Position numbers and translations under genes: made by a program. Positions 41,178 to 64,000 of a stretch of 64,000 nucleotides of DNA are shown one piece after another. The stretch's first letter is position 1; each line of letters begins with the position of its first letter. The DNA lies in contig NC_083242.1 in the NCBI RefSeq assembly GCF_032191835.1, positions 558,001 to 622,000 on the forward strand, read 5' to 3'. Source of the stretch: Heteronotia binoei (taxonomy: Eukaryota). The notes under the pieces were generated by a model. That model made no database searches. It had not been told where the DNA came from and worked only from the letters and a program-made list of their open reading frames with translations.

Positions 41178-42622
41178 TCTGTGACCGGACTTGCCTGCTT
41201 CCTTCTGGTGGCTCCAAACATGCCCGCCTTCCCTTCTCCAGCAGGGAATAAAAGCCCTCCTCCTCTGCTTGCTTGTGTGACTGTTGAATGTGGGGGGGAG
41301 TAGTGAAAGGGGTCCAGAGCAGGCAGCAGAAGACCTGAGTTCGAATCCTTGCTTAGCCATGGGGAAGAAGGGCGAATTAATGCACCCCTTATCCTCACCT
41401 GCTTTCCGGCATAAAAGAAGGCGAGACCTCAGGAAAAAGGGAGGGGGAAGCCAGTTGTGGGGGCTCCTGCTTTTACTCCCACCTGTGAAGGAGACCACCA
41501 CGTCCCCCCACAAGCAGGAGATGCAAGCCCTGTCCTGGTTCTGCCCAGCCCTTGGTCTGCGGGGGCAGTGGTGTCTGTGCTTATCAGGTCTCTTCTGGAT
41601 TTTGGCTTCTCTGCTTAAGCAGCTCTGCTGAAACTTTGCTGAAGGCCCCCCCCGCCCCCCCCTTGCAAGCCAGGCTCTCAGCTGCCCTGCATTAAAGAAA
41701 GATCTCCAAGGAACAAAGGAGGCTCCTTTGGGAGGGGAGGGGGCTTTCCCTCCCTCCCTCCTTCCCCCCCCCCACGTGCCTACTTGGGTCATGGCCCAGG
41801 GAGGGGTCAGGTTTGGGTGCCTCCTGATGGGTCTGTAAAAGGGACACCTGCCCTTCCTCAAGGTGGGGGCTTTTAGGAATTGGGGGATAGACTGTGGTTG
41901 CCAAGTCCAGGTTGAACAACAGCTGGAGGTTTGGGAGTGGGATTTGGGGAGGGGACACACTTCCGAGAGGTCCGTTGCCCAAAGCAGCCACTGCAGGCCT
42001 GAGCGCCCTTGTGGTTGTGGGAGACCTGCCCCTTCCCCCCGCCTGCCTGCTGGCCACCTCGAGAGACCTGGTGGGGGAGTTCTTTATTATTATTATTATT
42101 AAATTTTATTTGTATCCCGCCCTCTCCGCCTGGGCAGGCTCAGGGCGGCTAACAACATTCAGGGGGTTCTGGGGGGCAGGGAGGGAGGATACATAAAAGG
42201 CGCCTCTTTTCTTGGAGGGTTTCAGGTGCAGGAGAGACCTGGGCAGGGGCTGAGAGGAGCTGCCCTTCCCCTCCAGGGCTGGATAGCCGGGGGAAGGGGT
42301 GTGTGGAGAGGGAGCGATTGTCCTGGCCTGCCTCTGGGAAGCCCCCTGCCCGGGTGGGTCTCCCCCGCGCCCCGCTTGCTCTGAGGAGGGGAGGGAGGGG
42401 GGCTTGTGGCCTGGAGCTGGCGGGATCCCCGGCGCGTCTTGGGGGTGGGGGGCGGCTGGGGGGCCGGACTGGGCAGCAGCAGAGTCGCGGGGGGGGGGGG
42501 GCGAGGCTGCGCTTGCGGCGAGCGGGCGGAGGGGGGCGGGCGGGCTCTGCTGGCGGCGGGGCTGGGCGAGGCGAGGCGGCGGCGGGGCGCGGGGAGGCCG
42601 GAGCGGCGACGGGGCGCGCAGC

Positions 42623-45600
42623 ATGGGCGGCCGCCTCTTGCCGCTGCTGGTGCTGCTGGGCGCCACAGGTAAGAGCCGACGGGGCGGGCAGCGGGGGGCG
42701 CTGCGGCTGCTGGGGGGCGGGGGTGCCGGTGCCCTTCGTCTCCGCGGCCAGCTTGGGGCGACGCCAGGCGCGGCACAGGCCCTCGACGCCCCACGGGGAC
42801 CCACCGGCACGTGGCCCCGATCCGCGAGTGCCCGCCCCCCGCCTTCCGAGGCTCCTTTGGCGCCCCTGGGGGAAGGAGGGCTCTGCCTTCGCTGGGCATG
42901 TGCGGGGGGGAGCGCGCCCTCCCTAGTCCCGGCGCCCCCCCACCTGGCCAAGCCCCCCCCCCCCAAGTGGCGCCTTCCCTGCGGGCAAGCAGACGGCGAG
43001 TGCCAGGAGCCCCCTTTGGGCTGGGGGGACTCGTGAGGGCAGCCAGTCGGGCTCCTGGCCGCTCCGCCCGCCTTTTCTGCCCCCCCCCCCCCCCCGGCCA
43101 GGGAAGAGGCGGCCCCGCTGTCCACGGTGCGGCTGGGGGTCCCTTCTTTCGCACCCAGCGCTTGGAGCTCTTCTGGGGCAGGGCGGGCGCTCCTCCAGTC
43201 CCACAACCGGCGGCGGACGGGGCGTCCCACTGGGCGGGGGAACCTGGTCCCAGAGAAAGGCATGCGGGGGTCAAGCCCTCCCCCGCTCCCGGGACCTTCT
43301 TCCAGAGGGGGATGTGCCCCTGACGGGACTCGAACCAGATCCGGCACGGCCTGCTTGGGGCTGCCAGAGAGGCACTCTGCACGTGGCCCTTTCCCCCTCC
43401 TCCCCGGAGGGCATCTCCATCGGGTGGGGGGGGGGGTGAGTGTGCTGCGGGTGGCCTTGGGAGGAAAAACACGCGGGGAGGGAGGGGGGGCTTGTGCTCA
43501 GCTGGGGTCTTCTTGTCTGGTGCTGGCCTTGTGATGAATGCGGGGCGGGGGGGGGGGTCTGGCTTGGGCCTACCTTGTGACATGCACAAGGGGAGTCCTT
43601 AGAACAGGCTGGGGGGGGGGGGGCTCCAGATTCCAGCTGGCTTTTCTCAGTAATTAGCCCCCCTCCCCGCATCCATGAAGGGCCCTGAACCCAGTGCGGG
43701 GGGGGGGGGGGCGCTGAGCCCAGGTCTTGGGTTGAGGGCTGAGGGTCCCAGGACTGTCAGACTGGCACTCTGTGCCCACCTCTTGGATGGGGCTGTCTCT
43801 CTTCTCCTGGGCCCCTGAGTTCAGTGCCAGCTTTGCCCTGGTTCAGCTGGAGGCAGGGCTGGCAGAAGGCTGTGGAGGCCGATCCCCTTCTCCCCCTGGC
43901 CCCAGGCAAGCCTATCCAGGGAGGAGTGGCCTGTTTATTTCCCCCTTTGGAATAAAGGAGTCCCTCTCGCTTCCCGTGGGCACCCTCCCCTTCTCCCCTG
44001 CCCAGGCCAAGGGGGCACCATTCAGGCTGGCCCTTCCAGGGCAACCGTGAGGGGGGGGGGTCATTGCTTCATGCTGAAGCAGGACCCAGTTTGGCTTGGG
44101 GGCTATTCAGTGCACAGAAGACGAGATGCCCCAGCCCTTAGGAATGGAAGCATTCAGGTTTGCTGGCTCTTCATATATGAACATCTGAAGCTGCCTTCTA
44201 CTGAATCAGACCCCCCTGGGTCCATCAAAGTCAGTATTGCCTACTCAGACTGGCAGCTGCTCTCCAGGGTCTCCAGCTGAGGTTTTTCACGCCTGCTTGC
44301 CTGGACCCTTTTGAGTTGGAGATGCTGGGGATTGAATTTGGGACCTTCTGCTTGCCAAGCAGATGCTCTGCCACTGAGCCACCATCCCTCCCTTCGTCCA
44401 GGGCCAGCTGGGAGAGGGAGAAGGGGCAGCTTCTTGCCTCATTCCAGATGACTGAAGAGCAGCAGCCCGTAAGACTCTGGAGGGCCTTGCCTGGGTGCCT
44501 GCCTCAGTCCTTTGTCGCACGGGGATGCCCAGAGCCCTGCTGGCTTCTCCACCGGCCAGGGGAGTGGGGGGTTTAGAGCTGCGGTGTGTGTGAGTGGGGG
44601 GGGCATTCTGAATCCTGCCCTGGGCTATGGGTGGTTTCTGCAGGTGAACTCATTTGGGGGCAGTGCGGAGAGTCCTTCCACAAACATCAGTGCCTGCTTG
44701 GCATGATCAAGGCCACCCAAGGGTGCTCCGCTCTGCCCTGTTGAGCTCCTGCTGCATCCTGTGCCCCTTTTGGAGCAGAGACGGGGGGGGGGGGTTGCCA
44801 GCTGCCCTGGATCCACTGGTGTCAAAGGGACCGGCAGCAAGTGCCCGCGTGTGCCCAGAGAAAGCCCGTTGCCATGGAGATGCAGGGCTGGTGATGCAGT
44901 CTCTTCTCTCTCTCTCTCCCGCCTCCCTCCCTCCCTGTGGGTTGCTCCTAACGATAGTGGCAGTTTAATGTAATTAGGCTTCTCTTGAGTTTGGCAGCAC
45001 TAGGAGGGTGACGCCAAGCCCAGCTTCCGGAGAGGGCCAAGAACACCCCCCACACACACACATACACACTCACATAGGCCGGAGATGCTTCTCCCAGAAG
45101 CAGAGAGTGATTTTGGTTTTTAATTATTTTAATTTATTATATATTTTACCCCCAGAATGGGGTTTGGGGTGGCTGACAGGATCACAATGCAGTAACAATG
45201 CAGGAGTGGCCGTTAACTGAGGAATTCCTTCTTCCTCTGGCATTTGGAAGACAAACAGCACCTGCCCATGAGCAGAGTGCCGTCTGCAGACCAGGTGTCT
45301 GGAGTGGGCTTGTGTGTCCCGCCCTCTCAAGGCCACACGTGGGTCTCTCTGGCGGCACCTCCTGGAATCCAAGCATCACACAGAGAACACTCCCAGTTTG
45401 TGTGCATGTGTGCGTGTGTAGAAGAAGAAGAATTGCAGATTACCCTGCCTTTCTCTCTGAATCAGAGACACAGAGCGGTTCACAATCTCCTTTATCTTCT
45501 CCCCCCCACAACAGACACCCTGTAAGGTGGACAGGGCTGAGAGGGCTCTCCCAGCAGCTGCCCTTTCAAGGACAACTCTGCCAGAGCTATGGATGTCCCA

Positions 45601-48600
45601 AGGCCATTCCAGCAGCTGCAAGCGGAGGAGTGGGGAATCAAGCTCGGTTCTCCCAGATAAGAGAGCTCTGGCTGACCCAAGGCCATTCCAGCAGCTGCAA
45701 GTGGAGGAGGGGGGGAATCCAACCCGGTTCTCCCTGATAAGAGAGCACTGGCTGACCCAAGGCCATTCCAGCAGGTGCAAGTGGAGGAGTGGGGAATCAA
45801 GCTCGGTTCGCTCAGATAAGAGAGCTCTGGCTGACCCAAGGCCATTCCAGCAGCTGCAAGTGGAGGAGTGGGGGATCAAACCCGGTTCTTCCAGATAAGA
45901 GAGCTCTGGCTGACCCAAGGCCATTCCAGCAGCTGCAAGTGCAGGAGTGGGGAATCAAACCCGGTTCTCCCAGATAAGAGAGCTCTGGCTGACCCAAGGC
46001 CATTCCAGCAGCTGCAAGTGGAGGAGTGGGGGATCAAACCCGGTTCTTCCAGATAAGAGAGCTATGGCTGACCCAAGGCCATTCCAGCAGCTGCAAGTGG
46101 AGGAGTGGGGAATCAAACCCGGTTCTCCCAGATAAGAGAGCTCTGGCTGACCCAAGGCCATTCCAGCAGGTGCAAGTGGAGGAGTGGGGAATCCAACCCG
46201 GTTCTCCCAGATAAGAGAGCTATGGCTGACCCAAGGCCATTCCAGCAGCTGCAAGTGGAGGAGTGGGGGATCAAACCTGGTTCTTCCAGATAAGAGAGCT
46301 CTGGCTGACCCAAGGCCATTCCAGCAGCTGCAAGTGGAGGAGTGGGGAATCAAACCCGGTTCTCCCTGATAAGAGAGCTCTGGCTGACCCAAGGCCATTC
46401 CAGCAGCTGCAAGTGGAGGAGTGGGGAATCAAACCCGGTTCTCCCAGATAAGAGAGCTCTGGCTGACCCAAGGCCATTCCAGCAGGTGCAAGTGGAGGAG
46501 GGGAAAATCAAACCCGGTTCTCCCACATAAGAGTCCATGCACTACCCCAAACTGGAGGGGGTAACGTTTGCACCCCAAATCTGGAGGCTGCAGCAGTTTT
46601 CCAGGTGGAGCGTTTTTGCAAACCCCCTTGCTCTGCTTTTCCCTCTAGGGCTGGAGCCTGCTGAGCCGGTGGAGCCAACCCCTCCGCAGCCCCTGAGCCC
46701 CCTCTCCTCTGTCCGAGCCGAGCCCTCCTGGGACCCTACACCTGCCCCCCTTCCTCCCACGTGGCACCTGAAGCTGGCATCCTCCCGGGCTGTGGAAATG
46801 CCCACGGATTCGACAGCAGTGGAGAAGACCTCTGAAGCAGGCCAAAGGGAGCGAGCCGAGCCTCCCACACGCCTAGGGGGCAGCGGGCAGCCCCACCCAG
46901 TTAACTCCGCTGTCACCAAGATGGTGCTTCTTCCCTCCTCCTCCTCTCCTGCAGGTGCCACTGTGCACGGATCCAGCCCTTCCTGGCCTTCGGAAGGGCT
47001 CTCTTCAGAGGGTGCCCCAGGGGGCCGGCAGCTCACAACTCCCTCACAGAGGTCGGGCACCGGAGTGCAAGTGGACGTGCGCCCCCCCATGGCTGAGGCC
47101 CCATGGGCTGCTGGGAAGGCCAATGCACCGGGGGTGGTCCCTGTGCCCCCCTCTCTCAGCCCAGCCAGCAGCCCGAGGATGCAAGTCGAGGGGGCCGAGC
47201 GCCACCATGTTGGGCTCCCGAGGCCTTCTCTGGCTGCAGTGGGGGGGCCGGTCTCAGGAGCTCCCCTCCCGAGTCCCACCAGGTCAGCAGACTCTGCCGA
47301 GACCCTCCAGCAGGCCCCTGCTGCCCTTGCAGAGTTGCTCCACAGGGGGAGCACTGCCCCACAGGTGGTGGGACCCGAGGAGTTTCCCTGGCAACCAGCG
47401 GCCAGCGAGGCCTATGAGGAGTTGGAGAGGAAAACGGGCCTGCCCCCTGCATCTGCCAGGCCCCCCAAGCATTGGTCGACCGTGGGACTTCAGCTGGCTG
47501 CCACAGCCCCTCCAGAGTCCCGGGCTCTCCCCAGATCAAGTGTGGGGCCAGATCTCATGGCAGGGGAGGACACGACTCCAGGAGACTTTCCAGGGAGGGT
47601 GGGTCTCACAGCCCCCTATGGAACGTCGCTGGGGCAGAGGGCCTCTGTGTGGGAATGGGTCTCTGGAGGGGCAGGCAGTGGGTCAAAGACCACCCCCCAT
47701 GTCACCCCTTCCTCTTCTTATGCAGCAGCAGCAGCAACCTCATCCGTGAGCCCAGGCGTTTTCTGCCACCGCTCTGGGCAGGCCCCCAGTGACAGCCCCC
47801 TTGTGGCCAGTCCCAGCTCGCCCTCGAGCCCCGGGGGGCTCTCCACAGACCCCACTGGAGAGGCAGGAGCTTCAGGCACAGGCCGGGAGGCCCTTCAGAC
47901 TTCCACACAAGCCCTACCCACCCTCGGAGCTCCCACCGCCCCTGCCGCTCACCAGTTCACGGAGCCCTTTGGCACCCTGCCGGATCTGGCACAGTCTTCT
48001 CCTGTGCTGGTGCAGCCCCCTCCCAACGGGGTCACGGCGGGGGGAGCCTCTTCCAGCTCAGGCAGGAGCTCAGCTGCTGGCACAGAGAGAGCGGGCTTCT
48101 CTTCAGCCTCTCCGGAGAGACGCCCAACAGGGGCACCACAGGACGGCTTCCCTTGGGAGGCAGCCTCCAGCCACGCCAGCCCACCTGCGGGAGAAACCAC
48201 GGCAACGGTCCCCCAGGCCCTGGGGACGCAGGAGCCCAGACCCAGGAGGCCTCCCAGCCCAACTGCGTTTGCTGCCTGGACCCCAGGGGAGGAGTCAACT
48301 CACCCCAGGCTCTCCTGGCTTCCGTTCCAGCCAGCACTTTTCTCCAGCCCCCCCTCTGCTGCGGCCGTGCCCCCCAGGCAAGGGGGCGAAACGGGGGGCC
48401 CTGCTCTGATCACCACCCACCCATCGTGGTCGACTCCAGCCGGGACATGGCGGTGGGGCAGGGGGGGCCCTTCGACAGGAACCTTGGTGAGGGCCCCCCC
48501 TCCTTCTCCGCCTCTGCCAACCACAGGAAAGGCCTGGCACACCTGGCCCCCGGCAAGGGGCGACCCGCCCGTCGCCAGCACCTGGCTCTTGGCTCTGGTG

Positions 48601-51600
48601 CCCGAGGCCGCAACACAGCTGGCGCCTGCCACGTCGAGGGAGGCCCGCCCGAGGGTCCCGCCGGTCTTCGTGGCGGAGAACCAGCCCCCTCTGCTGAAAG
48701 GTCAGTAGGGCAGCCGTGGGCGTGAGCTGTGCACCCCACATGGGGCTGGGCTATGGGGTCACAGGGCAGCTGGGGATCTCCTGCAGGCACCTTTCAGATC
48801 AGGCCCTGGCCAGAACCCTTGGAGGAGGCCGGGGGGGGGGCTTCTCTGTGGCAGCTGAGGCTGTTGGTCATTGGCCTGCCCAGCTTCTGAGGGACTCCAG
48901 CCCTGTCCCTTTGTGCTCTGTCCCCCCACCCTGCCCAAGCCCTCCTTCTCCCTGCGGGGCTGAGCTGGGCCAGGGGGCGCTTCTCTTTCTCCCCGCAGCC
49001 CCTTTCCTGCACCTCCCCTGGGAGCTGGTCCTGGCCACGGAGTCCCACGGCGGCTTCAGGAGCCCCCCCTTGCCCGACGACCTAGGCCTCCTGCGCAGCA
49101 TCAACGCAACGGTGAGCAGCTCAGGGTGGGGGGTGGGGTGACCCTGGCACCCCTGGGTGGTGGTTTTGCCTGAGCTGCCCAGGCTGCCCCTTGGGGGGTG
49201 TCTCACCTCCCCCCTCCCTTCCTCTCTAGGTCGCACCCCTCTTTGCTCCTTTGCCTGGATTCCAGCGCCTGGAGGTGAAAAGTATCCGGTACCTGTTTGG
49301 TTGACTCCCTTGTGGAGTTTCTTGCCCACCCCCTTCTTAGGGGTCTCAGTAGCAAAAACCCCACCCAGGGAAGGCCAGCCCTTGAGGCCCCTGTAAGAGT
49401 GCCCAGCTCTGGGTTGGGACATTCTGGAGATTTGGGGAGGGGGCTCCACATGGGGTCAAGCCGGAGAGACCACCTTCCCAAGCTGCTCTTTAATCCCTGT
49501 GGTCAGGAGATACAACTCCTGATCTCCAGCTGACAGCTGGAGGTTGGCGACCCTAGGTCCCAAAGCCCAGCTCAGAGAGGCTTCAGGTGGGGCAGCACCC
49601 AAGAGAAAGGTGCCTGGGAGCAGGGGGGGCATTGTGGAGTCCCTGCATGGAGAAGGTCACCCAGAAGCCCCAGGAAGGAGCCGGGCGTGTTCCATAACGG
49701 GATGGCTCCACCCATCCAGCATTCCCCCACCCTGAGAGGCCTCCATTGGCTCTGAGGGCGGATCAGGGCCCCAGGCACAGCTACCTGCTGACTCCCCTGC
49801 AGCCCTTCTCTCCGCAGGCCGGGCGGGGTGGTGGTGCTCTTGGATGTCCTCTTCCTGGCGGGGGCCCCCGGCTTGTGGGCAGCTCTGAATCGGCCAGGCC
49901 TGCTGAAGCCGCTGCCTCTCACCCCGTGGGCTGGCAACACCAGTGTCGCCTGGAGCCTGGCGCTGGGTGAGTAGGCTGCCAGGCAGGAGGCGGTGGCGGT
50001 GGCCGGATCCTGGGCAGTCCCACTTGGAGGGCGTCTTTCGAGCAGAGGGGAGGGGCTTGGATGGGGCTGGGGGGCGAGGGCTTTGAGCACAAGGGGAGGA
50101 GACAGGGCACCTCCTCCCCCCAAGCTTAAAATGTCCACTTGATGTGGCCCAAGAGAAAGGTCTGGCTAAGGTGGCTCCCACCAGCCCCCTTGTCCTTGGG
50201 CGTGGATTGCTGTTGCCCCCTCCCCTAGCAGCTGTGCCAGGCTTTTGGGAACTCTCCCTCTCCAGAGAGCCTGCCTTTGTGGCTCTCAGCCGTGCTGTGC
50301 CTTTGGGGCACAGCACGGGTACGTTAACATCTCCTGCTCCAGGGGCTCTTGGGGAGGGGGGGGGGCTTGCTGGCCATGCCAGTTCTGAGCTACATGAGCC
50401 CCCCCCCAAGTGCCTGCTGCCTCCCTCTCTCCCCCCCCCCCCAGAAAGGCCTCTGGACCTGTGTGCAGAGTTCTTCTTGTGCCCTGATGGCTACGACTGC
50501 ATTGTGGGTGAGGACGGCAATGCCACCTGTGCCTCTGTGTGCCACCGGGCGTACTGCAAGAACCAGGGCATTTGCACCCATGCCAACAACCAGATGCCCG
50601 TCTGCCAGTGAGTGCCCAACAGGGCTCGTCTTCCTCAGGGCTGGTACGTCCATGTGGGGGCAGTGTCACCACCCGGCACCCGCCTGACCCTTCTGTCCCT
50701 CGGCTCCCCAGGTGCCCGGCGGGCAGTGATTTCTGGTTCCTGGGGGTGCGTTGTGACTACCGAGTGACCCAGCAGGGCTTGCTGGGGGGGGCTTGCGGCC
50801 TGCTGCTGAGCCTGCTGCTGATTGGGGCAGCCATCTTCGGCCTGGTGGTGCGCAGGGTCCGGCTGCTGCTGCTGGAGGCCAGGGCGGACCAGACCAAGAG
50901 CAGGTGAGGGGGCCCCAAGGGGGCTTGGTTGGGTGGGTGGGATGTGGCCCCTCCCTCCCCCTCCAAGAGATGCTCTTTCCTCTGTCCCGGGGCTGGAGGC
51001 ATTTCCTCTCCAGGGGCTCCAGTTCAAGGGAAGCTGGACAGGAGGGGGAATCTTGCAGTGGCCTGCTGCAATGGCCTGGGGTCAGCCACAGCTCTTGTGG
51101 GAGTTGTCCTTGAAAGGGCAGCTGCTGAGAGAGCTCTCTCAGCCCCACCCACCTCCCAGGGTGTCTGTTGTGGGGGAGGAACGGAAAGGAGATTGTGAGC
51201 TGCTCTGAGACTCTCCGGAGTGGAGGGCGGGATATAAATCCAATATCTTCTTCTACCTCCCAGGGTGTCTGTTGTGGGGGAGGAAGGGAAAGGAGATTGT
51301 GAGCCGCTCTGAGACTCTTTGGAGTGGAGGGCGGGATATAAATCCAATATCTTCATCTACCTCACAGGGTGTCTGTTGTGGGGGAGGAAGGGAAAGGAGA
51401 TTGTGAGCCGCTCTGAGACTCTTCGGAGTGGAGGGCGGGATATAAATCCAATATCTTCTTCTACCTCACAGGTTGTCTGTCGTGGGTGGTGGAAGGGAAA
51501 GGAGATTGTGAGCCGCTCTGAGTCTCTGGCCGTTTTCCCACTGAGCTTACCTCGGAGCGACGTCCCTCTTCACCGCGCAGCGTCTGCGTGGATTTCCCAC

Positions 51601-53763
51601 CAACTGCTCCGAGGAACCAGGAAGTTCCCGACCTTTTGCATCGCAAATGGAAACCGCTAAAACCCAGTTTACGTTAGCGACGCAAAAGCCGCGACTACTT
51701 GGTTACTCGGAGCAGCCTTGGAGCAGTTGGTGGGAAATCTGCGCAGACGCTGCGTGGTGAAGAGGGACGTCGCTCCGAGGTAAGCTCAGTGGGAAAACAG
51801 CCTCTGGTTCAGAGAGAAGGGCGGGGTATAAATCTGCAGTTTTCATCTTCTCTGGCAGCTACCGCCGCTTCTGCCGGCTGGACGACGTGTCAGCCCATTA
51901 CTGGTCGGAGCCCTGGCTGGCCTCGGCTGACTCCCTGGACAACCCAGCCTTCAGCAACTCCGAGGAGCTCCTGCACCTACAGATCCTGGAGCCCCCCGGC
52001 TGCACCTGCCCGGAGGGCTGCCTGCTGGCTGCCGAGGGACGCCCCCACAAGCCCCTGCAGGGCGGCCCCTCCCGGGGGGCTGCAGGCCGGCCCAGGTACC
52101 CTCCTTCTCCAAGGCCTCCTCCACCTCTGGACTTCCCCTCGGCTGCAAACAGGCTGGTCTCCTCCCCCCACCCCCCCGTCTGGCCAAAGTGCTCCAGTTC
52201 AGAGAAAGGTCCCCGGCCCCAAGGAAGTCACAGTCAAGCGGCAGGGAGAGGGAGAGCCTACTGTGGGGGGGTGTGGGGGGGAGGGCTGATCCTGGAGGAG
52301 GGGAAGCGGCAGGACAAGGCCTAGTCTCTGGCGCTGAGCCCAGCCCTGGAGGGGAGATAAGAGGAGGAAGCCCACAGCCAGCAGACTTGGAGGGAGGAGG
52401 CCAGGAGAGGGAAAGACACTCCAAAAGCAGGCCTCTGGCAGTGGGAAAAGGCAAGCCCAGAGTGTGCATCACGCCCCCCCTTCCCTTGCCACTGTTGCTG
52501 GCCTTTTGGCTATCCAGTCACAGCCCACTTCTGGCGACCCCCACCGCACCCTGTGGGCTTTTCAGGGCAAGAGGCCTTCCGAGGTGGTTGGCCCCTGCCT
52601 GCCTCTGCGTAGCCACCCTGCACTTCCCCGGGTGGTCTCCCATCTCCCAGGGCTGACCCTCTGGGCTTCGGAGATTGGGCTCACCTGTGCTGTCCAGGTG
52701 AGGGCAGAGGTGCTCGACTTGGCTGGTGTTCAAGAGCAGACCCCCCCTCCAGCCAGGCAGAGGCCTTCTGCAAAAGCATTGAAAGAGCCTGGGGGGGAGG
52801 GCAGAAAAGAAGCTCGGGGATGTCTGTCTGCTCAGTGCCTGGGGGGGGGGGAGTGGGAGGTGGTGCGACTCCACGTTTTGAGTCTACAGAGACCCCCATC
52901 AGCGGCTGGCTGCTCAGACTTTGCTTTCCTCCAGGAGCTGTGGGGAGGGGAGGGTGCCTTGGCCTGGTGGGAACGGTGTTGTAAGCAACCTGCCCCGCTT
53001 GCTTTGGGGGAGCGGTGGGGGGCAGGGGAAGAGAGCCAAGCTGGGAGGGGCCAGGAGGCATCCTGCTCCACTTCCTGCCATTGTGTCTGCGGCCAGGTCT
53101 CTCTGCAGCTGGGAGCGCAGTTCCGGCGGCGGCAGCAGCGGCAACGAGCACATGATTGACTCCGGGAAGGCCAGCGAAGTCTCCGTCTCCAGCTGGCCCA
53201 TGGAGCCCATCCAGTGGACCCCTTCACCAGCCCTGCACAGCCACGGCCACACCCGCCAGCCCACGGTGAGCGCAAGGGGGGGAGCTAAGGCTTGGACTTA
53301 GAGAAGCCTGCACTGGAGGCCCTTCCAGGCAGGAGACGAACGGAGGGGGGTTGCCCCTGCCTGCCTCCGTGGCTGCGGGGTGGCTGCGCAGCTCAGGGGC
53401 ACGAAAGGGATGTTTCTGTGCATCTGTGGCTGTAGAGGGCCCTTCTGAAAGCCAGCAGTGCCCCTGGGGAGCAGCCCTGTGAGAGCGGCCACTCCCCTCA
53501 GAGAAGCCGAACCCCCTTTTCTCTCTCTCTAGGCCTTCCCAGGGCGCCACCACCTCAGTCACCCCCTGGCTCAAAGGCCCCCTGGCCTGCACACCTCCAG
53601 CACCTGCCTGGGCTTGCCTGAGCCCACCCCGCAGGGCCTGGCCTCCAGCAGAGAGAGCTCCCCCTCACTCCCCTCCTCTCTTCCTCAGCACAAAAGCCGG
53701 CGGCCTCATTCGTACTGCGAGGGGATGGAGCTCATCAACCTGGAGAGAAGCTGGACAGCCTGA
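42623..53763 (+). CDS. Unnamed mucin-like type I membrane protein (signal peptide, PTS region, SEA-like, EGF-like, TM, long cytoplasmic tail), 10 exons, about 1084 or 1136 aa
   Basis: Exons 42623-42668, 46649-48700, 48999-49111, 49230-49288, 49818-49966, 50445-50607, 50712-50903, 51859-52095, 53097-53265, and 53533 or 53689 to 53763. All junctions are GT-AG and phase-compatible; sums 3411 or 3255 nt. Strong Kozak GCAGCATGG; MGGRLLPLLVLLGAT; 10-Cys module; TM GLLGGACGLLLSLLLIGAAIFGLVV followed by RRVR. Confidence 0.85.
44170..44392 (-). mobile_element. tRNA-derived SINE (family B)
   Basis: Reverse complement of the head GGTGGCTCAGTGGCAGAGCATCTGCTTGGCAAGCAGAAGGTCCC plus body. Confidence 0.75.
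45420..46540 (-). mobile_element. SINE family A with about 12 tandem 79-bp units (intron 1 of the mucin-like gene)
   Basis: Tail GAAGAAGAAG at 45420; one degenerate unit at about 45595, then CTGACCCAAGGCCATTCCAGC every 79 bp from 45672 to 46462; ends about 110 bp before the 46649 acceptor. Confidence 0.9.
51060..51842 (+). mobile_element. SINE family A 3' part, tail segment repeated three times, interrupted by a MITE
   Basis: GGAGATTGTGAGC(C/T)GCTCTGAG recurs at about 51189, 51292, 51392 and 51501; the final tail GGTTCAGAGAGAAGGGCGGGGTATAAATCTGCAGT resumes at 51806. Confidence 0.75.
51528..51802. mobile_element. Foldback MITE, PIF/Harbinger-like (about 83-bp TIRs, 3-bp TSD)
   Basis: Left arm GGCCGTTTTCCCACTGAGCTTACCTCGGAGCGACGTCCCTCTTCACC...CCACCAACTGCTCC is mirrored on the right with about 4 mismatches; TCT flanks both ends (51525-51527 and 51803-51805). 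Confidence 0.85.
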
Positions 53764-53978
53764 GCCCCGTGCAGCCCAGCCCAGCCCAGCTCCCAGAGGC
53801 CACAGAGGGGACCAGCTGGCTGTGCTGGCAGGACTCTCCCAAGGCAGCTCGGTTTCAGGAGACCAGCCCCCCCTTCCACCTCCAGGCCACAGGACGCAGG
53901 CAGCAGCCTGAGGGGCAAAGAGGACAACAGGGGTGGGGAGGGACCTCTTGTAAGTGACCGGACGAGGCCTCGAATGCC

Positions 53979-54099: not shown

Positions 54100-55080
54100 C
54101 ATCAGAACACCAGAAGAGAGCTCGGCTGGATCAGACCAGGGAGAAGGGTCCACCTAGTCCAGCTCCCCATCTCACACAGGGGCCAACCAGTTCCTCTGGA
54201 GGGCCAACAACAGGGCAGAGAGGCCGAGGCCTTCCCCTGAGAAGAGCATCAGAAGAGCCCTGCTGGATCAGACCAGGGAGGGTCCATCTAGCCCAGCCTC
54301 CTGTCTCACACAGTGGCCAGCCAGTTCATCTGGAGGGCCAACAACAGGGCAGAGAGGCTGAGGCCTTCCCCTGAGAAGAGCATCAGAAGAGCCCTGCTGG
54401 ATCAGACCAGTGAGGGTCCATCTAGTCCAGTCTCCTGTCTCACACTGTGGCCAGCCAGTTCCTCTGGAGGGCCAACAACAGGGCAGAGAGGCCGAGGCCT
54501 TCCCCTGAGAAGAACCTCAGAAGAGCCCTGCTGGGTCAGACCAGGGAGGGTCCATCCAGTCCAGCCTCCTGTCTCACACAGTGGCCAACCAGTTCCTCTG
54601 GAGGGCCAACAACAGGGCAGAGAGGCTGAGGCCTTCCCCTGAGAAGAGCATCAGAAAAGCCCTGCTGGATCAGACCAGTGAAGGTCCATCTAGTCCAGCC
54701 TCCTGTCTCACACAGAGGCCAACCAGTTCCTCTGGAGGGCCAACAACAGGGCAGAGAGGCTGAGGCCTTCCCCTGAGAAGAGCATCAGAAGAGCCCTGCT
54801 GGATCAGACCAGTGAGGGTCCATCTAGTCCAGCCTCCTGTCTCACACAGAGGCCAACCACTTCCTCTGGAGGGCCAACAACAGGGCAGAGAGGCCGAGGC
54901 TGTCCCCACATTGCCTCCTGGCTCTGGGGTTCAAAGGTTTAGTGTCTCTGGATGTGGAGGTTCCCCTCAGCCATCCTGCTAGTAGCCACTGATAGACCAT
55001 GAGTCTATCCAATCCCTTTTGAAGCTGTCTGCTCCTGTGGCCATCTCTCCGGCAGCAAATCCCAGATTTCCATCTGTCCT
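54100..55080 (-). repeat. CR1 3'-end fragment with about 6 tandem 134-bp units, opposite orientation to the 12010-13380 array
   Basis: (C)ATCAGAA(G/A)AGCCCTGCTGG at 134-bp period (54247, 54381, 54515, 54649, 54783), followed by CR1-like AGTAGCCACTGATAGACC...CAATCCCTTTTGAAGCTG. Confidence 0.85.
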
Positions 55081-55187: not shown

Positions 55188-55193
55188 TTTATT
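55188..55193 (-). terminator. TNRC6A polyadenylation signal AATAAA
   Basis: TTTATT on the + strand at the end of an AT-rich 3'UTR of about 1.6 kb. Confidence 0.65.
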
Positions 55194-56776
55194 AATAGTT
55201 GGAGAAACGTCATAATTTTCAAACACAAACTCAACTGTACATTTTACAATCACCCCTGCTTGTAAACAGTTAAAAAGCCACTGACTTCTTCAGCATCTTC
55301 TTCGGACACAACAGCTAAGAATCAAGGCCATGAAATGAGTCTTTCAGCACAGTTAAAACATTTTTTTTATCCTTGTTTAGTCTTCTCTTTCAACTTCCCA
55401 GCTAAACAAGCAACAAGTAATATAATACCATTTGTGGCAAAAAAAAAAGGGGGGGAGGGAATGATGATTTTAACACTTCCACAAGAAAAGCAGTTGCAAG
55501 AACTCCTTAAACATTTAAAATTTTATACAACAAAAGTTTCTGTAAGCCCAGGACCTCGGTTACAGTCTGCATAGTTACCCGGTTCGTCTTTAAGGTTAAA
55601 CACTGAACAAACTCACGAGAGAGAGCAGGGCTGAAGGGCGGAGAATAAAGAGATTCAGAGGCTAAGCCCCCCACCCCACCCCCAGCACTGGAAAGCAGTC
55701 CGACTCCAGCAAGGTGAAGCAATTTTTGGCAGAAGTTTGACCGAGCAAGTCATGAAGATCAGTGCTAAAACGTGATTTTTCCTAGAAGGAGCTACAGGAA
55801 TCGGATGAGGGCCTTGGTTTTCCTGAGAGCCACGCGCTCTGCGAGTCAGTCGGGGCGAGGAGCCGTACACGTGCATGCACGCCACGTGGCCAAAAACTGC
55901 TCGGGTTTCCCAGAGAGAGAGAGAGAGAGATAGAAGCATCTGGATCAGCCCTGCTTCTGTCGGTGGTGTTTTTAAAAAGTAATTTTTAAAAAGGATGGAA
56001 GAGTAAACATTGTTTCTCAAAAACAAGAATGCACAATTTCTGTAAACAAGGCAGCGCCCCCCCCCAACACAGGAGCCCTTCTCCCCCCCCCCAAAAAAAA
56101 GAAAAGAAAAGAAAAAACCCCAGAAGCCTACAGAAAGTGCAGAACCTGCCCGGGACGCCAATCTCAGCCACGCAGTTTTCGCTGGGTGCCCATGCCACTC
56201 TGCCCGACTCACCTAGTGCCAGGCCTTGCCTTCCCTTCCCTCTCCTCCCCGTCACGTGCTTGATTGTGGCTGGAGGGGCATCAAGGCACTGTGGAACACC
56301 CCCTGGCCCCCGCCAGGAAATGCTGCCCATCAATGGCCACCTCCGCCAGGCAGGAAACGGGCCGGCCAGCCCCCTGCAGGGCAACGAAGGCTCTGGGGCC
56401 CAGATGGTCAGCAGTCAAGGGACCGATGCAAAGGAGAAACCACACGACAGGCCAACAGACACACACAGCCACACAGCACAAAGCCTGTTGACTCTCAGGA
56501 GGCTCCTAAAACTACCCAAAACGCTCTCTGGAAGTTTCCATCCGTCACTTTTTTTCACATTATAGACTTGGCCTGCAGGATTCAAGTATTCAAACTGGCA
56601 CGTTGGGGGTTAACACATGTATGGGGGGGGGGAGGAAATGTGCACAAAAGTAACGGCTTCCACAGGTGACCGCCCCCCAGTCCGCCCTCCCCCCAGGCTG
56701 CAGGGGGTGTGGGCAGAGGGCAGGGGGGGGGGCAGATGTAGTGCTGCTTCCTGCCGTGTCTTCTGAGGTCACAGTT

Positions 56777-59700
56777 TCATTCGCTGAAGGAGGAGAGGGG
56801 GTGGCACTGGCTGCCCCCCAGGTGGTCGACGGAGGAGAGGAATGCGTGGAGTGGGGAGGGGCTGCTGAGGCCCTGGCCATCGCCGCTGCCCAGGGAGCCC
56901 CACAGGCCAGCAGAGGGGTAGCTGGGGCTCCCCCCCCAGAGGGAGGTGCTTGGGAGCTCCCCACCCCCGCCCCCCTGCAGTCCAGCCCCCGTCCAGTGAT
57001 TGCTCAGCTCGCCGCTGCTGCCGCCGCTGCTGCGGAAGGCGGAGGGGGAGGAGGAGGCGTCCAGGGAGCCCAGCCGGCTCTGGCCACTGCCCAGGGACTG
57101 CCAGGCCGGGGAGGAGGGGGCCAGAGACGGGCCTTGTGCAAAGAAGCGGCTGATCTCCTCTTCACTGGCTAGCTCCGCCAGGATTGTCGTGTTCCCCAAG
57201 ACACACCTGTGCAGGGAGGGGGGAAGGGTCAGCCTCTCCGCCCACTCCTCTCGGGGGCCCATCCTGGGGGACCCCAAGCCCTCCCCCCCCAACACTCCAC
57301 ACCTTGGCTCTTGGGATCCCACCCCCCTTCCAGCAGGAGAAGGCGGCGGCTGCGGATTTATACACTCCACCCTTCTCTCTGTATCAAGCGCCTATAGCTT
57401 CTTCCTGCACAACAGACACCCTGGGAGGTGGGTGGGGCTAAGAGGGCTCTCCCAGCGGCTGCCCTTTCAAGGACAACTCCTGCAAGAGCTCTGGCTGACC
57501 CAAGGCCATTCCAGCAGGTGCAACTGGAGGAGTGGGGAATCCAACCCGGTTCTCCCAGATAAGAGCTCTGGCTGACCCAAGGCCATTCCAGCAGCTGCAA
57601 GTGGAGGAATGGAGAATCAAACCCGGTTCTCCCAGATAAGAGAGCTCTGGCTGACCCAAGGCCATTCCAGCAGGTGCAAGTGGAGGAGTGGGGAATCCAA
57701 CCCGGTTCTCCCAGATAAGAGTCTGCACATTTAACCACTACACCAAACAGGTCAAAGACCAACATGACCACAACTTTGGGTCCAGCTGGAAACTGCCCCC
57801 ACCAGGGAACTCTGAAATCCCACCTGCATTGCGAAGGATCCCCTTGCACATTTCCTCCCGGGTCAGCAACTCCCCTCACCAGAGCTCTCTGCTGGAGGGA
57901 ACCCCCCCCCCCCCCCAGCCACTCACATGTGCAGGGACTTCTGTGCCTTTGCCACCTCTTCTTTTGAACTGTAGCGGACCAGGGCGTTGCCGTGCGGGAG
58001 GTTCAGGTGGAAGGTGATGAGCGGCCCGTGCTGCATGCAGAGCGTCCGCAGGGTGGAGCCATCAATCTGCGGGGGGGGGGGGGGGGGGGAGAAGCAAGGA
58101 CACGCGCCGTGGCACACGTACTTTCTCGGGGGTGGGGAATGCCCCCCACAAGCCCCAGGGGGCCACTCCACTCACCTGCGGCGTGAGGTTCTTCAAGATG
58201 AGAGAGCAGCTAGTGAGTCCCCCTGAGCTGCTCTCCACCCAATGGGAACCTAGAAGACGACGACAATGTTGGATTTCTATCCCGCCCTCCACTCCGAAGA
58301 GTCTCAGATCGGCTCACAATCTCCTTTCCCTTCCTCCCCCACAACAGACACCCTGTGAGGTGGGTGGGGCTGAGAGGGCTCTCACAGCAGCTGCCCTTTC
58401 AAGGACAACCTCTGCCAGAGCTCTGGCTGACCCAAGGCCATTCCAGCAGCTGCAAGGGGAGGAGTGGGGGAATCAAACCCGGTTCTCCCAGATAAGAGGG
58501 CTCTGGCTGACCCAAGGCCATCCCAGCAGGTGCAAGTGGAGGAGTGGGGAATCAAACCCGGTTCTCCCAGATAAGAGGGCTCTGGCTGACCCAAGGCCAT
58601 TCCAGCAGCTGAAAGTGGAGGAGGGGGGAATCGAACCCGGTTCTCCCAGATAAGAGAGCTCTGGCTGACCCAAGGCCATTCCAGCAGCTGCAAGTGGAGG
58701 AGTGGGGAATCAAACCTGGTTCTCCCAGATAAGAGGGCTCTGGCTGACCCAAGGCCATTCCAGCAGCTGCAAGGGGAGGAGTGGGGAATCAAACCCGGTT
58801 CTCCCAGATAAGAGGGCTCTGGCTGACCCAAGGCCATTCCAGCAGCTGCAAGGGGAGGAGTGGGGAATCAAACCCGGTTCTCCCAGATAAGAGGGCTCTG
58901 GCTGACCCAAGGCCATTCCAGCAGCTGAAAGTGGAGGAGGGGGGAATCAAACCCGGTTCTCCCAGATAAGAGAGCTCTGGCTGACCCAAGGCCATTCCAG
59001 CAGCTGCAAGGTGAGGAGTGGGGAATCAAACGCGGTTCTCCCAGAGAAGAGTCCGCACTCTTAACCACTATACCAAACTGGCTCTCCAGGAGAGACCAAA
59101 ACAGGCAGGTGGCGCCTCCACTCCACAGAGCCCAAGGAGGGCCGTCCCCGAGCTCTGATTCCTGGGCCCAACGGGGTCAGCAGCCGCCAGACTCCCCTTC
59201 TGCCCCAACTCAACTCCTGGCTGGCAGGGCCAAAGCAGCAGCAGGAAGCTCTCACTTACCCGCAGGGGCGTATCTGGCCTCGGGGCTGCTCCAGCCGCCG
59301 CCGCCCAGCCGCATGGAGCTGTCCCAGGCCGGGAGAGGCAGCTTGTGGCCGCTCAGCCCCGGGGGCGGGCGTGATGGGGCAGGGATGCTGCCCTTGCTGG
59401 GCAGAGGGACTTTCCACAGCTCGTGAGCCAAGGAGGAGTTGCTCAGGGAGGCCGCAGACCACATGGATTTGGAGTCACTGTTTCTAGCTGCGGGGGCGGG
59501 GAGGGAGAGAAAGCAAAGCGCTGAGACGGGGGGGGGGGGCACACGGAAGCAGCCAGCGAGGGGGGGGCAGGGGAACCCCCCGGGAGGGCCCGCTCCCACC
59601 TGAAGTGCTTTGTGCTGTGCTGCTGAGGGAACCATTGTAGCTGGAGGCACGAACGGAGGACCAGGCACTAGTCGAAGGCAGCGCGGTGTTCAGAGATGAG

Positions 59701-63991: not shown

Positions 63992-64000
63992 CTGCAGAGG

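What the first reader, a model, noticed from the sequence alone, without database searches (positions are those of the whole stretch)
42623..53763. Unnamed mucin-SEA-EGF transmembrane receptor gene at the synteny break
Seen: a complete 10-exon, phase-consistent ORF with signal peptide, a 684-codon Pro/Ser/Thr/Ala-rich exon, a SEA-like segment, a 4-Cys plus 6-Cys EGF-like module (CPDGYDC...YCKNQGICTHANNQMPVCQCPAGSDFWFLGVRC), a TM helix and a cytoplasmic tail of roughly 180-230 aa. Established: this SEA-EGF-TM layout is shared by MUC3/12/13/17 and IMPG2. Inference: I recognise no human gene at this position, and the tail is long and structured for a membrane mucin, so this may be a poorly characterised non-mammalian signalling mucin.
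Basis: partly seen in the sequence, partly recalled or inferred. Interest (0 to 1): 0.75.

Follow-up and report, generated by a model that had tools for sequence, protein, structure and literature searches.

The report
Lizard orthologue of zebrafish vap
This is a real, intact gene for a membrane glycoprotein (mucin-like stalk, SEA domain, EGF module, one membrane helix, very conserved inner tail); it is the lizard copy of the little-studied zebrafish gene vap, found from sharks to platypus but in no therian (marsupial or placental) mammal.

Summary
The gene is real. Ten GT-AG exons on the + strand are phase-consistent, and every exon from the 3' part of exon 2 onward matches orthologues from other species. 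One boundary needs correcting. The protein is then about 1080 aa with a tail of about 173 aa.

It is not nameless. It is the single-copy orthologue of zebrafish vap (Vascular associated protein, si:ch211-14k19.8). That gene has one 2012 paper, which I know by title only. Other databases give it wrong automatic names, such as NACA-like, collagen-like or "IMPG2 protein, partial".

Orthologues run from sharks to birds, lizards, platypus and echidna. No therian mammal appeared in two large protein searches.

In orthologues the SEA fold, all 10 cysteines of the EGF module and the membrane helix are confirmed. AlphaFold predicts a disordered tail, but it carries near-invariant short motifs: SSYRRF, NPAF, DSGKAS and the C-terminal ERSWTA. 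These motifs are more conserved than the ectodomain.

In this species the SEA self-cleavage serine is a glycine.

The gene is already known as a family but poorly characterised, so interest is moderate.

The parts
42500..43000 (.). CpG island over the start of the gene; probable promoter and 5'UTR
   Evidence: GC 0.80 and CpG observed/expected 0.81 in 42500-42999, against 0.12-0.3 in the flanks. G-rich short repeats lie at 42487-42616.
42623..42668 (+). Exon 1: ATG and signal peptide (15 codons plus 1 base), donor gtaaga
   Evidence: Sequence read and phase checked. The N-terminus resembles the Lerista and Pogona orthologue N-termini.
46649..48700 (+). Exon 2: 684 codons, a Pro/Ala/Ser/Gly/Thr-rich stalk without tandem repeats
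   Evidence: The acceptor has a 90 % pyrimidine tract. No repeat array lies inside it. Its 3' 120-150 codons align to lizard orthologues at 37-57 %. A word search with the whole exon found nothing.
48999..49111 (+). Exon 3: first part of the SEA domain, with an N-glycosylation sequon
   Evidence: tblastn borders at 48998-49117. Only 34-50 % identical to other lizards, which are 68-85 % identical to each other here.
49230..49288 (+). Exon 4: SEA middle part, containing the PGFQ..LEV block
   Evidence: tblastn 49230-49289, 70-85 % identity.
49818..49966 (+). Exon 5: SEA strand holding the self-cleavage position, which reads Gly-Gly-Val-Val-Val here instead of Gly-Ser-Val-Val
   Evidence: Sequence. 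Anolis HSP at 49816-49947. Most orthologues carry G-S at this position.
50445..50607 (+). Exon 6: the 4-Cys module and the first four Cys of the EGF-like domain
   Evidence: tblastn 50462-50608 at 51-65 % to lizard, bird, coelacanth, shark and danionin. All Cys are invariant in 37 orthologues.
50712..50903 (+). Exon 7: last two Cys of the EGF domain, the transmembrane helix and the basic juxtamembrane stretch
   Evidence: tblastn 50710-50901 at 77-85 % to lizards. In the AlphaFold model of the Lacerta orthologue this is one long helix with pLDDT above 90.
51859..52095 (+). Exon 8: tail block with the SSYRRF and NPAF motifs
   Evidence: A HMMER search with this exon alone gave 89 hits, 18 of them below 1e-10. 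It is 49-92 % identical to orthologues from shark to Anolis.
53109..53265 (+). Exon 9: tail block with the DSGKAS...SWPMEPIQWTP motif
   Evidence: tblastn from 53110/53143 to 53238-53265 at 55-85 %. D-S-G-K-x-S is invariant in 37 orthologues.
53689..53763 (+). Exon 10 as supported by orthologues: the last 24 codons (ending ...ERSWTA) and the stop.
   Evidence: Every orthologue HSP starts at 53689 or 53692. The RNA contig of run X1 lies on 53688-53889 from its letter 65. Bin depths fit its first 64 letters on the end of exon 9. This junction is inferred from depth arithmetic and was not listed as a joint.
55644..55649 (+). First AATAAA downstream of the stop; possible polyadenylation signal, giving a 3'UTR of about 1.9 kb
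   Evidence: Pattern scan. Not supported by reads.

Best explanation
What it is (shown). This is the squamate orthologue of the gnathostome single-copy gene known in zebrafish as vap (Vascular associated protein, si:ch211-14k19.8). It encodes a type I membrane glycoprotein with these parts, in order:
- a signal peptide;
- a stalk of about 680 aa, Pro/Ala/Ser/Thr-rich and probably O-glycosylated;
- one SEA domain;
- a 10-cysteine module (4 Cys plus a canonical 6-Cys EGF) placed directly on the membrane;
- one transmembrane helix that continues as a basic juxtamembrane helix;
- a disordered cytoplasmic tail of about 173 aa.

How it works (inferred). The tail is the business end. It carries four blocks kept almost unchanged for over 400 million years:
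- SSYRRF next to the membrane;
- SLDNPAF, an NPxF motif of the kind read by PTB/FERM endocytic adaptors;
- DSGKAS followed by spaced serines, matching the DSGxxS phosphodegron read by beta-TrCP in Snail and in the cytokine receptors IFNAR1 and PRLR;
- an invariant C-terminus, RRPxSYCEGMELVxLERSWTA, which is likely a docking site.

I therefore read it as a cell-surface receptor or adhesion-type sensor. Its surface level and signalling would be set by phosphorylation-dependent adaptor binding, endocytosis and ubiquitination.

In zebrafish the gene is linked to blood vessels and erythropoiesis. That link rests on the paper's title and on gene-set membership only.

SEA self-cleavage was probably ancestral but is dispensable. 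The nucleophile Ser is Gly in this species.
For: Gene model.

Orthology:
- Exon 8 alone finds 89 proteins, nearly all ending in ...E[RK]SWTA.
- The tree of 40 C-termini follows the species tree. Proteins labelled vap, Vascular associated protein and si:ch211-14k19.8 fall in a single teleost clade.

Domains:
- Pfam SEA scores 29.8 bits in Pogona (cut-off 26.4) and is found in 14 of 37 orthologues; EGF is found in 19 of 37.
- The AlphaFold model has pLDDT 84-98 over SEA, EGF, TM and the juxtamembrane helix, and below 50 over the tail.
- Foldseek top hits are MUC16 SEA5 (TM-score 0.67 by target), TMPRSS6 and the SEA domain of a mouse transmembrane protease (2e7v).

Constraint:
- Mean column conservation is 0.83-0.84 in the tail blocks, against 0.39-0.56 in SEA.
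- D-S-G-K-x-S, N of NPAF, S-S-Y-R-x-F and all 10 Cys are invariant.
- The window carries all of these motifs.

Literature:
- The vap reference appears in the reference lists of PMC4498767 and PMC4350073.
- si:ch211-14k19.8 is in a blood-vasculature gene set (PMC11968557).
- It is listed as an uncharacterised iridophore-enriched transcript (PMC3706446).
Against: - No experiment on the tail motifs is known to me. The degron, NPxF and docking readings are pattern matches to short motifs, which are common by chance. Only their invariance argues for function.
- The Kawahara paper could not be read, so its data are not used.
- RNA support in this species is almost nil. There is one metatranscriptome run of a related organism, with one informative contig.
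- The first SEA exon is unusually diverged in this species, so the ectodomain may be under relaxed constraint here.
- The spliced protein of the window itself was never searched or folded as one piece. Domain calls rest on orthologues.
Confidence: 0.85

Rival explanations
1. It is a member of the SEA-type transmembrane mucins (MUC3/12/13/17). It would act mainly as a glycocalyx or barrier molecule, with the tail of secondary importance.
For: It has the same domain vocabulary: PTS region, SEA, EGF, TM. Automatic names such as mucin-12-like and mucin-17-like were given by NCBI. Atlas feature scores are 0.92-0.93 to the 'Mucin-12 family' and 'Mucin-17-like' clusters.
Against: Exon 2 has no tandem repeats and only 21 % Ser+Thr. 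There is no EGF directly before SEA. The tail, not the stalk, is the conserved part. The stalk is not detectably conserved even by word search. The genomic neighbours here are TNRC6 (tested) and, by an unverified scan note, DCTN5/PALB2. From my own knowledge, not tested here, the human MUC3/12/17 genes lie at 7q22 and MUC13 at 3q21, with none of these neighbours.
Confidence: 0.08
2. It is an IMPG2 paralogue: an extracellular-matrix proteoglycan anchored in the membrane, as the many bird records named 'IMPG2 protein, partial' suggest.
For: Dozens of bird genome records, one caecilian record and one UniRef record carry IMPG2 names. The order SEA, then two Cys-rich modules, then TM resembles the IMPG2 C-terminal half (from my own knowledge). 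The Atlas feature score to an IMPG2 cluster is 0.88. Exon 2 contains eight Ser-Gly dipeptides.
Against: Only one SEA domain is found. The names are automatic best-hit labels, and the same clade also carries MUC17, CSPG5, MEP1B, collagen and NACA labels. No genuine IMPG2 appeared among the 89 tail hits. An Atlas score under 0.9 is only a lead.
Confidence: 0.1
3. Its main role is as a membrane-tethered EGF-family ligand or ErbB modulator. It would present or shed its membrane-proximal EGF module, as CSPG5/neuroglycan C does and as proposed for MUC4.
For: A profile of 37 orthologues matches human EGF, an EGF/TGF-alpha chimera, Spitz and Epigen best among all PDB sequences (E 5e-4 to 0.7). The G-x-R-C end of the module sits directly on the membrane helix and is largely conserved. 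Two bird records carry CSPG5 names.
Against: The E-values are weak. The module has extra cysteines and a 12-residue last loop, against 8 in EGF. Nothing explains the far stronger conservation of the tail. No receptor data exist.
Confidence: 0.12
4. In this species the gene is decaying or not expressed: a recently relaxed gene whose open frame survives by chance.
For: The first SEA exon is much more diverged than in other lizards. The cleavage Ser and a conserved Cys are replaced. There is almost no RNA evidence.
Against: Ten exons with intact splice sites and about 1080 open codons are present. The tail, TM and EGF exons are as conserved as between other lizards. A CpG island covers exon 1. 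The same Ser loss is seen in Pogona, alligator, a turtle and the gar and teleost orthologues examined, all of which keep the gene.
Confidence: 0.04

Closest known systems
[quoted passage not shown]
   Same: It belongs to the same single-copy orthologue group. It has the same SEA, 10-Cys module and TM layout, and the same tail blocks, including the ...SWTA C-terminus.
   Different: The danionin protein is about 50-70 % identical in the conserved exons. The gar and teleost orthologues examined lack the G-S cleavage motif. Coelacanth, paddlefish, lungfish and shark orthologues show a weak CUB and/or an EGF match at the N-terminus, a module that this squamate lacks; the surfperch and gar models showed no match. 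The zebrafish function is known to me only from the paper's title.
MUC3/MUC12/MUC13/MUC17 (SEA-type transmembrane mucins)
   Same: Type I membrane proteins with a Pro/Ser/Thr-rich region, a SEA domain and a membrane-proximal EGF. They are the nearest clusters by language-model features after the gene's own cluster.
   Different: This gene has no tandem-repeat mucin domain, no EGF before SEA, and an unrelated and much more conserved tail. Its genomic neighbourhood differs, and it is present in sharks and absent in therians.
IMPG2 (interphotoreceptor matrix proteoglycan 2)
   Same: SEA followed by two Cys-rich EGF-type modules, TM and tail, with a large low-complexity central exon. It is the commonest automatic label for the bird orthologues.
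   Different: This gene has one SEA instead of two.
MUC16 and membrane-protease SEA domains (PDB 7sa9, 1ivz, 2e7v, 9nrc)
   Same: The same alpha/beta sandwich fold in the model of the Lacerta orthologue.
   Different: Only 11-19 % sequence identity. The cleavage Ser is replaced by Gly in the window species.
HEG1 (heart of glass)
   Same: A vascular, mucin-like, EGF-containing type I protein with a functionally important tail. Atlas feature scores are 0.82-0.84.
   Different: There is no EGF_CA pair. The tail profile did not hit the HEG1 peptides in the PDB. SEA lies before EGF here.

Membership tests
Vap / si:ch211-14k19.8 orthologue group | Conserved cytoplasmic blocks (SSYRRF, SLDNPAF, DSGKAS..SWP.EP, C-terminal ...ERSWTA) | tested here: met
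   All blocks are present in window exons 8, 9 and 10. They are shared with 80+ database proteins.
Vap / si:ch211-14k19.8 orthologue group | Single-copy gene tree that follows the species tree and contains the proteins labelled vap | tested here: met
   IQ-TREE of 40 C-termini. The window itself was placed exon by exon with tblastn, not in the tree.
Vap / si:ch211-14k19.8 orthologue group | SEA, 10-Cys EGF module and TM architecture | tested here: met
   Pfam on orthologues, AlphaFold plus Foldseek and invariant Cys. The window exons carry the same residues.
Vap / si:ch211-14k19.8 orthologue group | Conserved neighbourhood | tested here: inconclusive
   A convergent TNRC6 neighbour is present in the window and in platypus. 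Zebrafish and bird loci were not examined, and the Ciconia look-up found no record.
Vap / si:ch211-14k19.8 orthologue group | Vascular or erythroid expression and function | not testable with these tools
   Only the title of the 2012 paper and gene-set membership are available.
SEA-type transmembrane mucins (MUC3/12/13/17) | Large tandem-repeat domain rich in Ser/Thr | tested here: not met
   No repeat array lies inside exon 2. Ser+Thr is 21 %, Pro 16.7 % and Ala 13.5 %.
SEA-type transmembrane mucins (MUC3/12/13/17) | SEA domain with a G|S-V-V-V self-cleavage site | tested here: inconclusive
   The SEA fold is met in orthologues. The site is G-S in most orthologues but G-G in the window.
SEA-type transmembrane mucins (MUC3/12/13/17) | EGF-SEA-EGF arrangement | tested here: not met
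   Pfam finds no EGF N-terminal of SEA in the lizard orthologues. The stalk runs directly into SEA.
IMPG2 | Two SEA domains | tested here: not met
   Each orthologue scanned has at most one SEA hit.
IMPG2 | Specific sequence kinship with genuine IMPG2 | not tested
   No IMPG2 sequence was available by reference. The only indications are automatic labels and an Atlas score of 0.88.
EGF-family ErbB ligands (including CSPG5) | Six-Cys EGF with G-x-R-C directly before the membrane helix, able to bind ErbB receptors | tested here: inconclusive
   Best PDB sequence matches are EGF, TGF-alpha, Spitz and Epigen at E 5e-4 to 0.7. Binding is not testable here.
HEG1 | Tail homologous to the KRIT1-binding HEG1 C-terminus | tested here: not met
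   A profile of 37 tails against all PDB chains of 20 or more residues gave no HEG1 hit at E up to 1.

The most novel reading that the evidence does not exclude
Vap would be an ancient gnathostome cell-surface receptor lost in therian mammals. Its disordered tail would combine a beta-TrCP-type DSGxxS phosphodegron, an NPxF adaptor motif and an invariant C-terminal docking peptide. That would make it a vascular or haematopoietic signalling module that mouse and human genetics never saw, possibly lost at the rearrangement that separates DCTN5 from TNRC6A in therians.
Probability: 0.3. Interest if true: 0.6.

Novelty: already known. Interest (0 to 1): 0.42.

Why it matters
The gene is conserved from sharks to monotremes. 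Its tail is more constrained than its ectodomain, yet it has one paper, no Pfam family for the tail, and a set of wrong automatic names (NACA-like, collagen-like, SAP18, IMPG2, mucin-2/5AC/19).

Its apparent absence from therian mammals explains why it has been overlooked. It is a candidate for lineage-specific differences in vascular or blood development.

For annotation, the practical gains are a correct name and a corrected last exon. The repeated loss of the SEA self-cleavage serine also offers a natural experiment on what that cleavage is for.

Tried and rejected
- Pfam on raw ORF pieces of the window found nothing, because the domains are split by introns.
- A word search with the 723-aa ORF over exon 2 found nothing, because low-complexity words swamp the candidates.
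- A PDB search with exon 6 alone gave only noise. The Lacerta C-terminal part gave weak EGF hits only.
- The Kawahara 2012 paper is not held under its PMC id or its PubMed id. Searches for text describing it gave only reference-list entries.
- RNA support: only one run was offered. It is a metatranscriptome kept as contigs, and nearly all of its 7160 laid pieces sit on SINE-derived repeats at 51.1-51.9 kb. That says nothing about this gene.
- The look-up of encoding contigs for the stork orthologue found no record.
- A search for CUB or EGF remnants in intron 1 found nothing.
All searches used single exons by reference or database orthologues.

Full report
**Observation**

The window is GC-rich vertebrate DNA carrying squamate-type SINEs. 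On the + strand between 42623 and 53763 I read ten exons from the sequence itself. I checked borders and phases arithmetically without building a joined sequence. Every exon has AG/GT borders, and the phases run 0-1-1-0-2-1-2-2-2-0 to a TGA at 53761-53763.

Exon 1 lies in a CpG island (GC 0.80, CpG observed/expected 0.81). It encodes a short signal peptide that resembles the N-termini of the Lerista and Pogona orthologues. Exon 2 has 684 codons: Pro 16.7, Ala 13.5, Ser 12.6, Gly 9.7 and Thr 8.5 %. It has one Cys, no N-glycosylation sequon and no tandem repeat.

**Correction to the model**

I ran tblastn with orthologues from Lacerta, Pogona, Anolis, Lerista, a stork, coelacanth, a shark, a danionin and platypus. 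The HSP ends fall on the exon borders I read. None of these proteins aligns to 53533-53688. All of them go from the end of exon 9 (53265) straight to 53689. That position has a strong acceptor (cttcctcag|CAC) and is also in phase 0.

The only informative RNA contig is 325 letters long, from run X1, and comes from a related organism. It lies on 53688-53889 starting at its letter 65. The bin depths are 1.86 in 53100-53299, zero in 53300-53499 and 0.35 in 53500-53699. These equal its depth of 5.81 times 64/200 and 12/200. The tool did not list this as a joint; I infer it from the arithmetic.

The protein is thus about 1080 aa, with a tail of about 173 aa.

**Identity**

Pfam on raw ORF pieces and a word search with exon 2 gave nothing. 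I therefore spent the single exhaustive HMMER job on exon 8 alone, by reference. It returned 89 proteins, 18 of them below 1e-10. Most are 1000-2400 aa long, with the match about 150 residues from their C-terminus. Nearly all end in the same peptide...CEGMELVxLE[RK]SWTA.

Cluster look-ups and two word searches gave species and names:
- lizards: Lacerta, Podarcis, Tiliqua, Lerista, Pogona, Anolis, Phrynocephalus;
- turtles, alligator and well over a hundred birds;
- platypus and echidna;
- caecilian, salamanders and frogs;
- lungfish and coelacanth;
- gar, sturgeons and paddlefish, and many teleosts;
- sharks.

The names are automatic and contradictory. They include NACA muscle-form-like, collagen alpha-1(I)-like, SAP18, mucin-2/5AC/12/17/19-like, serine-rich adhesin, and "IMPG2 protein, partial" for most bird-genome records. 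Three labels are informative: "Vascular associated protein" (UniRef; Astyanax and Triplophysa), "uncharacterized protein vap" (Gasterosteus) and "si:ch211-14k19.8" (Solea, Periophthalmus).

A maximum-likelihood tree of 40 C-terminal regions follows the species tree and shows one copy per species. These three labels fall in one teleost clade. So they name the same gene, and the window gene is its squamate orthologue.

[quoted passage not shown] I know this paper only from the reference lists of PMC4498767 and PMC4350073, because it is not held. Two further papers mention si:ch211-14k19.8. One lists it as an uncharacterised iridophore-enriched transcript (PMC3706446). The other places it in a blood-vasculature gene set (PMC11968557).

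**Mammals**

The search with the platypus EGF-TM-tail region gave 125 hits and listed 120. The only mammals were platypus and echidna. None of the 89 tail hits has a mammal-like C-terminus other than platypus. The monotreme branch is long, at 0.69 substitutions per site.

One tilapia protein also carries an nr label of ferret, which looks like contamination. I conclude, with moderate confidence, that therian mammals lack an annotated orthologue. A very diverged or unannotated copy is not excluded.

**Domains**

- Pfam SEA passes its cut-off in Pogona (29.8 against 26.4 bits). It is found in 14 of 37 C-terminal regions, and EGF in 19 of 37.
- AlphaFold on Lacerta residues 850-1239, with a 37-sequence alignment, gives pLDDT 84-98 for residues 1-230. 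That covers a beta-alpha-beta-beta-alpha-beta SEA fold, small beta-hairpin modules, and one long helix running through the membrane into the juxtamembrane stretch up to SSYRRF. The remaining 150 residues score below 50.
- Foldseek against the PDB puts MUC16 SEA domains first (7sa9, TM-score 0.67 by target). TMPRSS6, the SEA domain of a mouse transmembrane protease (2e7v) and the mouse MUC16-like SEA domain follow.
- A profile search of PDB sequences matches the 6-Cys module best to EGF, TGF-alpha, Spitz and Epigen (E from 5e-4), and the SEA part to ADGRF1 (E 0.012). No HEG1 peptide is hit.
- All ten cysteines are invariant in 37 orthologues.

**Where the constraint lies**

Mean column conservation is 0.39-0.56 over SEA and 0.72-0.79 over the EGF core. 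It reaches 0.83-0.84 over three tail blocks. The invariant residues spell S-S-Y-R-x-F after the membrane, N of SLDNPAF, and D-S-G-K-x-S followed by spaced serines and W-P..P..W..P.P. The last twenty residues are near-invariant. The window has all of these.

It is a disordered string of very old linear motifs.

The following readings rest on established motif knowledge, not on a test here:
- NPxF/NPxY is read by PTB and FERM adaptors.
- DSGxxS is the beta-TrCP phosphodegron used by Snail (DSGKGS) and by IFNAR1 and PRLR.
- The C-terminus may be a docking peptide.

This gives my working mechanism: a surface receptor whose level and output are set by phosphorylation, adaptor binding, endocytosis and ubiquitination. 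These steps are inferred.

**SEA cleavage site**

Shark, sturgeon, coelacanth, caecilian, salamander, birds, most lizards and monotremes have G-S-V at the self-cleavage position. The gar and teleost orthologues examined, one turtle, alligator, Pogona and the window species do not. The window reads G-G-V-V-V.

In the window the first SEA exon is also only 34-50 % identical to other lizards, which are 68-85 % identical to each other there. The EGF, TM and tail exons are as conserved as between other lizards. Cleavage thus seems ancestral but dispensable.

**Architecture over time**

Coelacanth, paddlefish, lungfish and shark models variously show a weak CUB match (17-18 bits, below the cut-off; coelacanth and shark) and an EGF match at the N-terminus. 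The EGF is above the cut-off in paddlefish and lungfish. Alligator, a tortoise (Chelonoidis) and two birds (stork, duck) show an EGF-like end there. The window's intron 1 holds no remnant, and Lerista also lacks the module.

**Surroundings**

Downstream, on the - strand, lies a TNRC6 gene. Its PABC-binding domain exon is at about 59.9-60.1 kb (Pfam 86.5 bits). In platypus the vap orthologue is followed by a convergent 1784-aa gene that holds the same exon at 90 % identity. The 3' neighbourhood is therefore old and is not a break.

The upstream PALB2/DCTN5 promoter is a first-stage note that I did not verify.

From my own knowledge of the human map, PLK1 to RBBP6 lie between DCTN5 and TNRC6A, and TNRC6A has the opposite relative orientation. 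A rearrangement next to vap in the therian lineage is thus a plausible route to its loss. This was not tested.

**Comparison with known families**

It fails defining features of both:
- it has no tandem-repeat mucin domain;
- it has no EGF before SEA;
- it has one SEA, not two;
- its tail is unrelated to theirs.

It is a family of its own that already has a name.

**Verdict**

Novelty: already known as a gene family, but barely studied and widely misnamed. Interest is moderate.

Noticed in passing
window 45583-46533; 51151-51527; 54117-54907: There are three minisatellites built from pieces of SINE-like repeats: 79 bp x 12, 104 bp x 3.6 and 134 bp x 5.9, each 93-95 % matching. They lie in intron 1 (ending 115 bp before the exon 2 acceptor), in intron 7 and in the 3' flank. 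The thousands of RNA contigs of run X1 laid at 51.1-51.9 kb belong to this repeat family, not to the gene.
   Followed up: partly
window about 55190-64000, - strand: A TNRC6 (GW182-family) gene lies convergent with vap. Its PABC-binding domain exon is near 59.9-60.1 kb (Pfam PF16608, 86.5 bits). A Gln/Leu-rich ORF lies at 63.5-64.0 kb, and TTTATT at 55188 may be its polyadenylation signal. The two 3'UTRs may overlap.
   Followed up: partly
window 48999-49111 and 49818-49966: The SEA domain of this species is unusually diverged. The first SEA exon is 34-50 % identical to other lizards, against 68-85 % among them. The self-cleavage Ser is Gly, and a Cys conserved in other amniotes is Trp. The EGF, TM and tail exons are normally conserved.
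   Followed up: partly
orthologues P0017, P0019, P0025, P0078 (N-termini); window 42669-46648: Coelacanth, paddlefish, lungfish and shark orthologues show a weak CUB match and/or an EGF match at the N-terminus. Squamate models and the window's intron 1 show no trace, which suggests the module was lost in squamates.
   Followed up: partly
database records: The orthologue group carries many wrong automatic names: NACA muscle-specific form-like, collagen alpha-1(I)-like, SAP18, PERM1-like, basic proline-rich protein-like, mucin-2/5AC/19/22, FLO11, and IMPG2/MUC17/CSPG5/MEP1B in bird genome records. One tilapia protein (P0291) also bears an nr label of Mustela putorius furo, which is probably contamination.
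   Followed up: no
window 42487-42616: G-rich short tandem repeats (periods 21-35) lie directly upstream of the ATG, inside the CpG island.
   Followed up: no
window 52096-52324: The frame of exon 8 stays open for 76 codons past the donor at 52095. Several short database proteins (for example P0001, P0008, P0010) are ORF-style calls that read one codon into this intron (...RPR). This looks like read-through annotation rather than an isoform.
   Followed up: no
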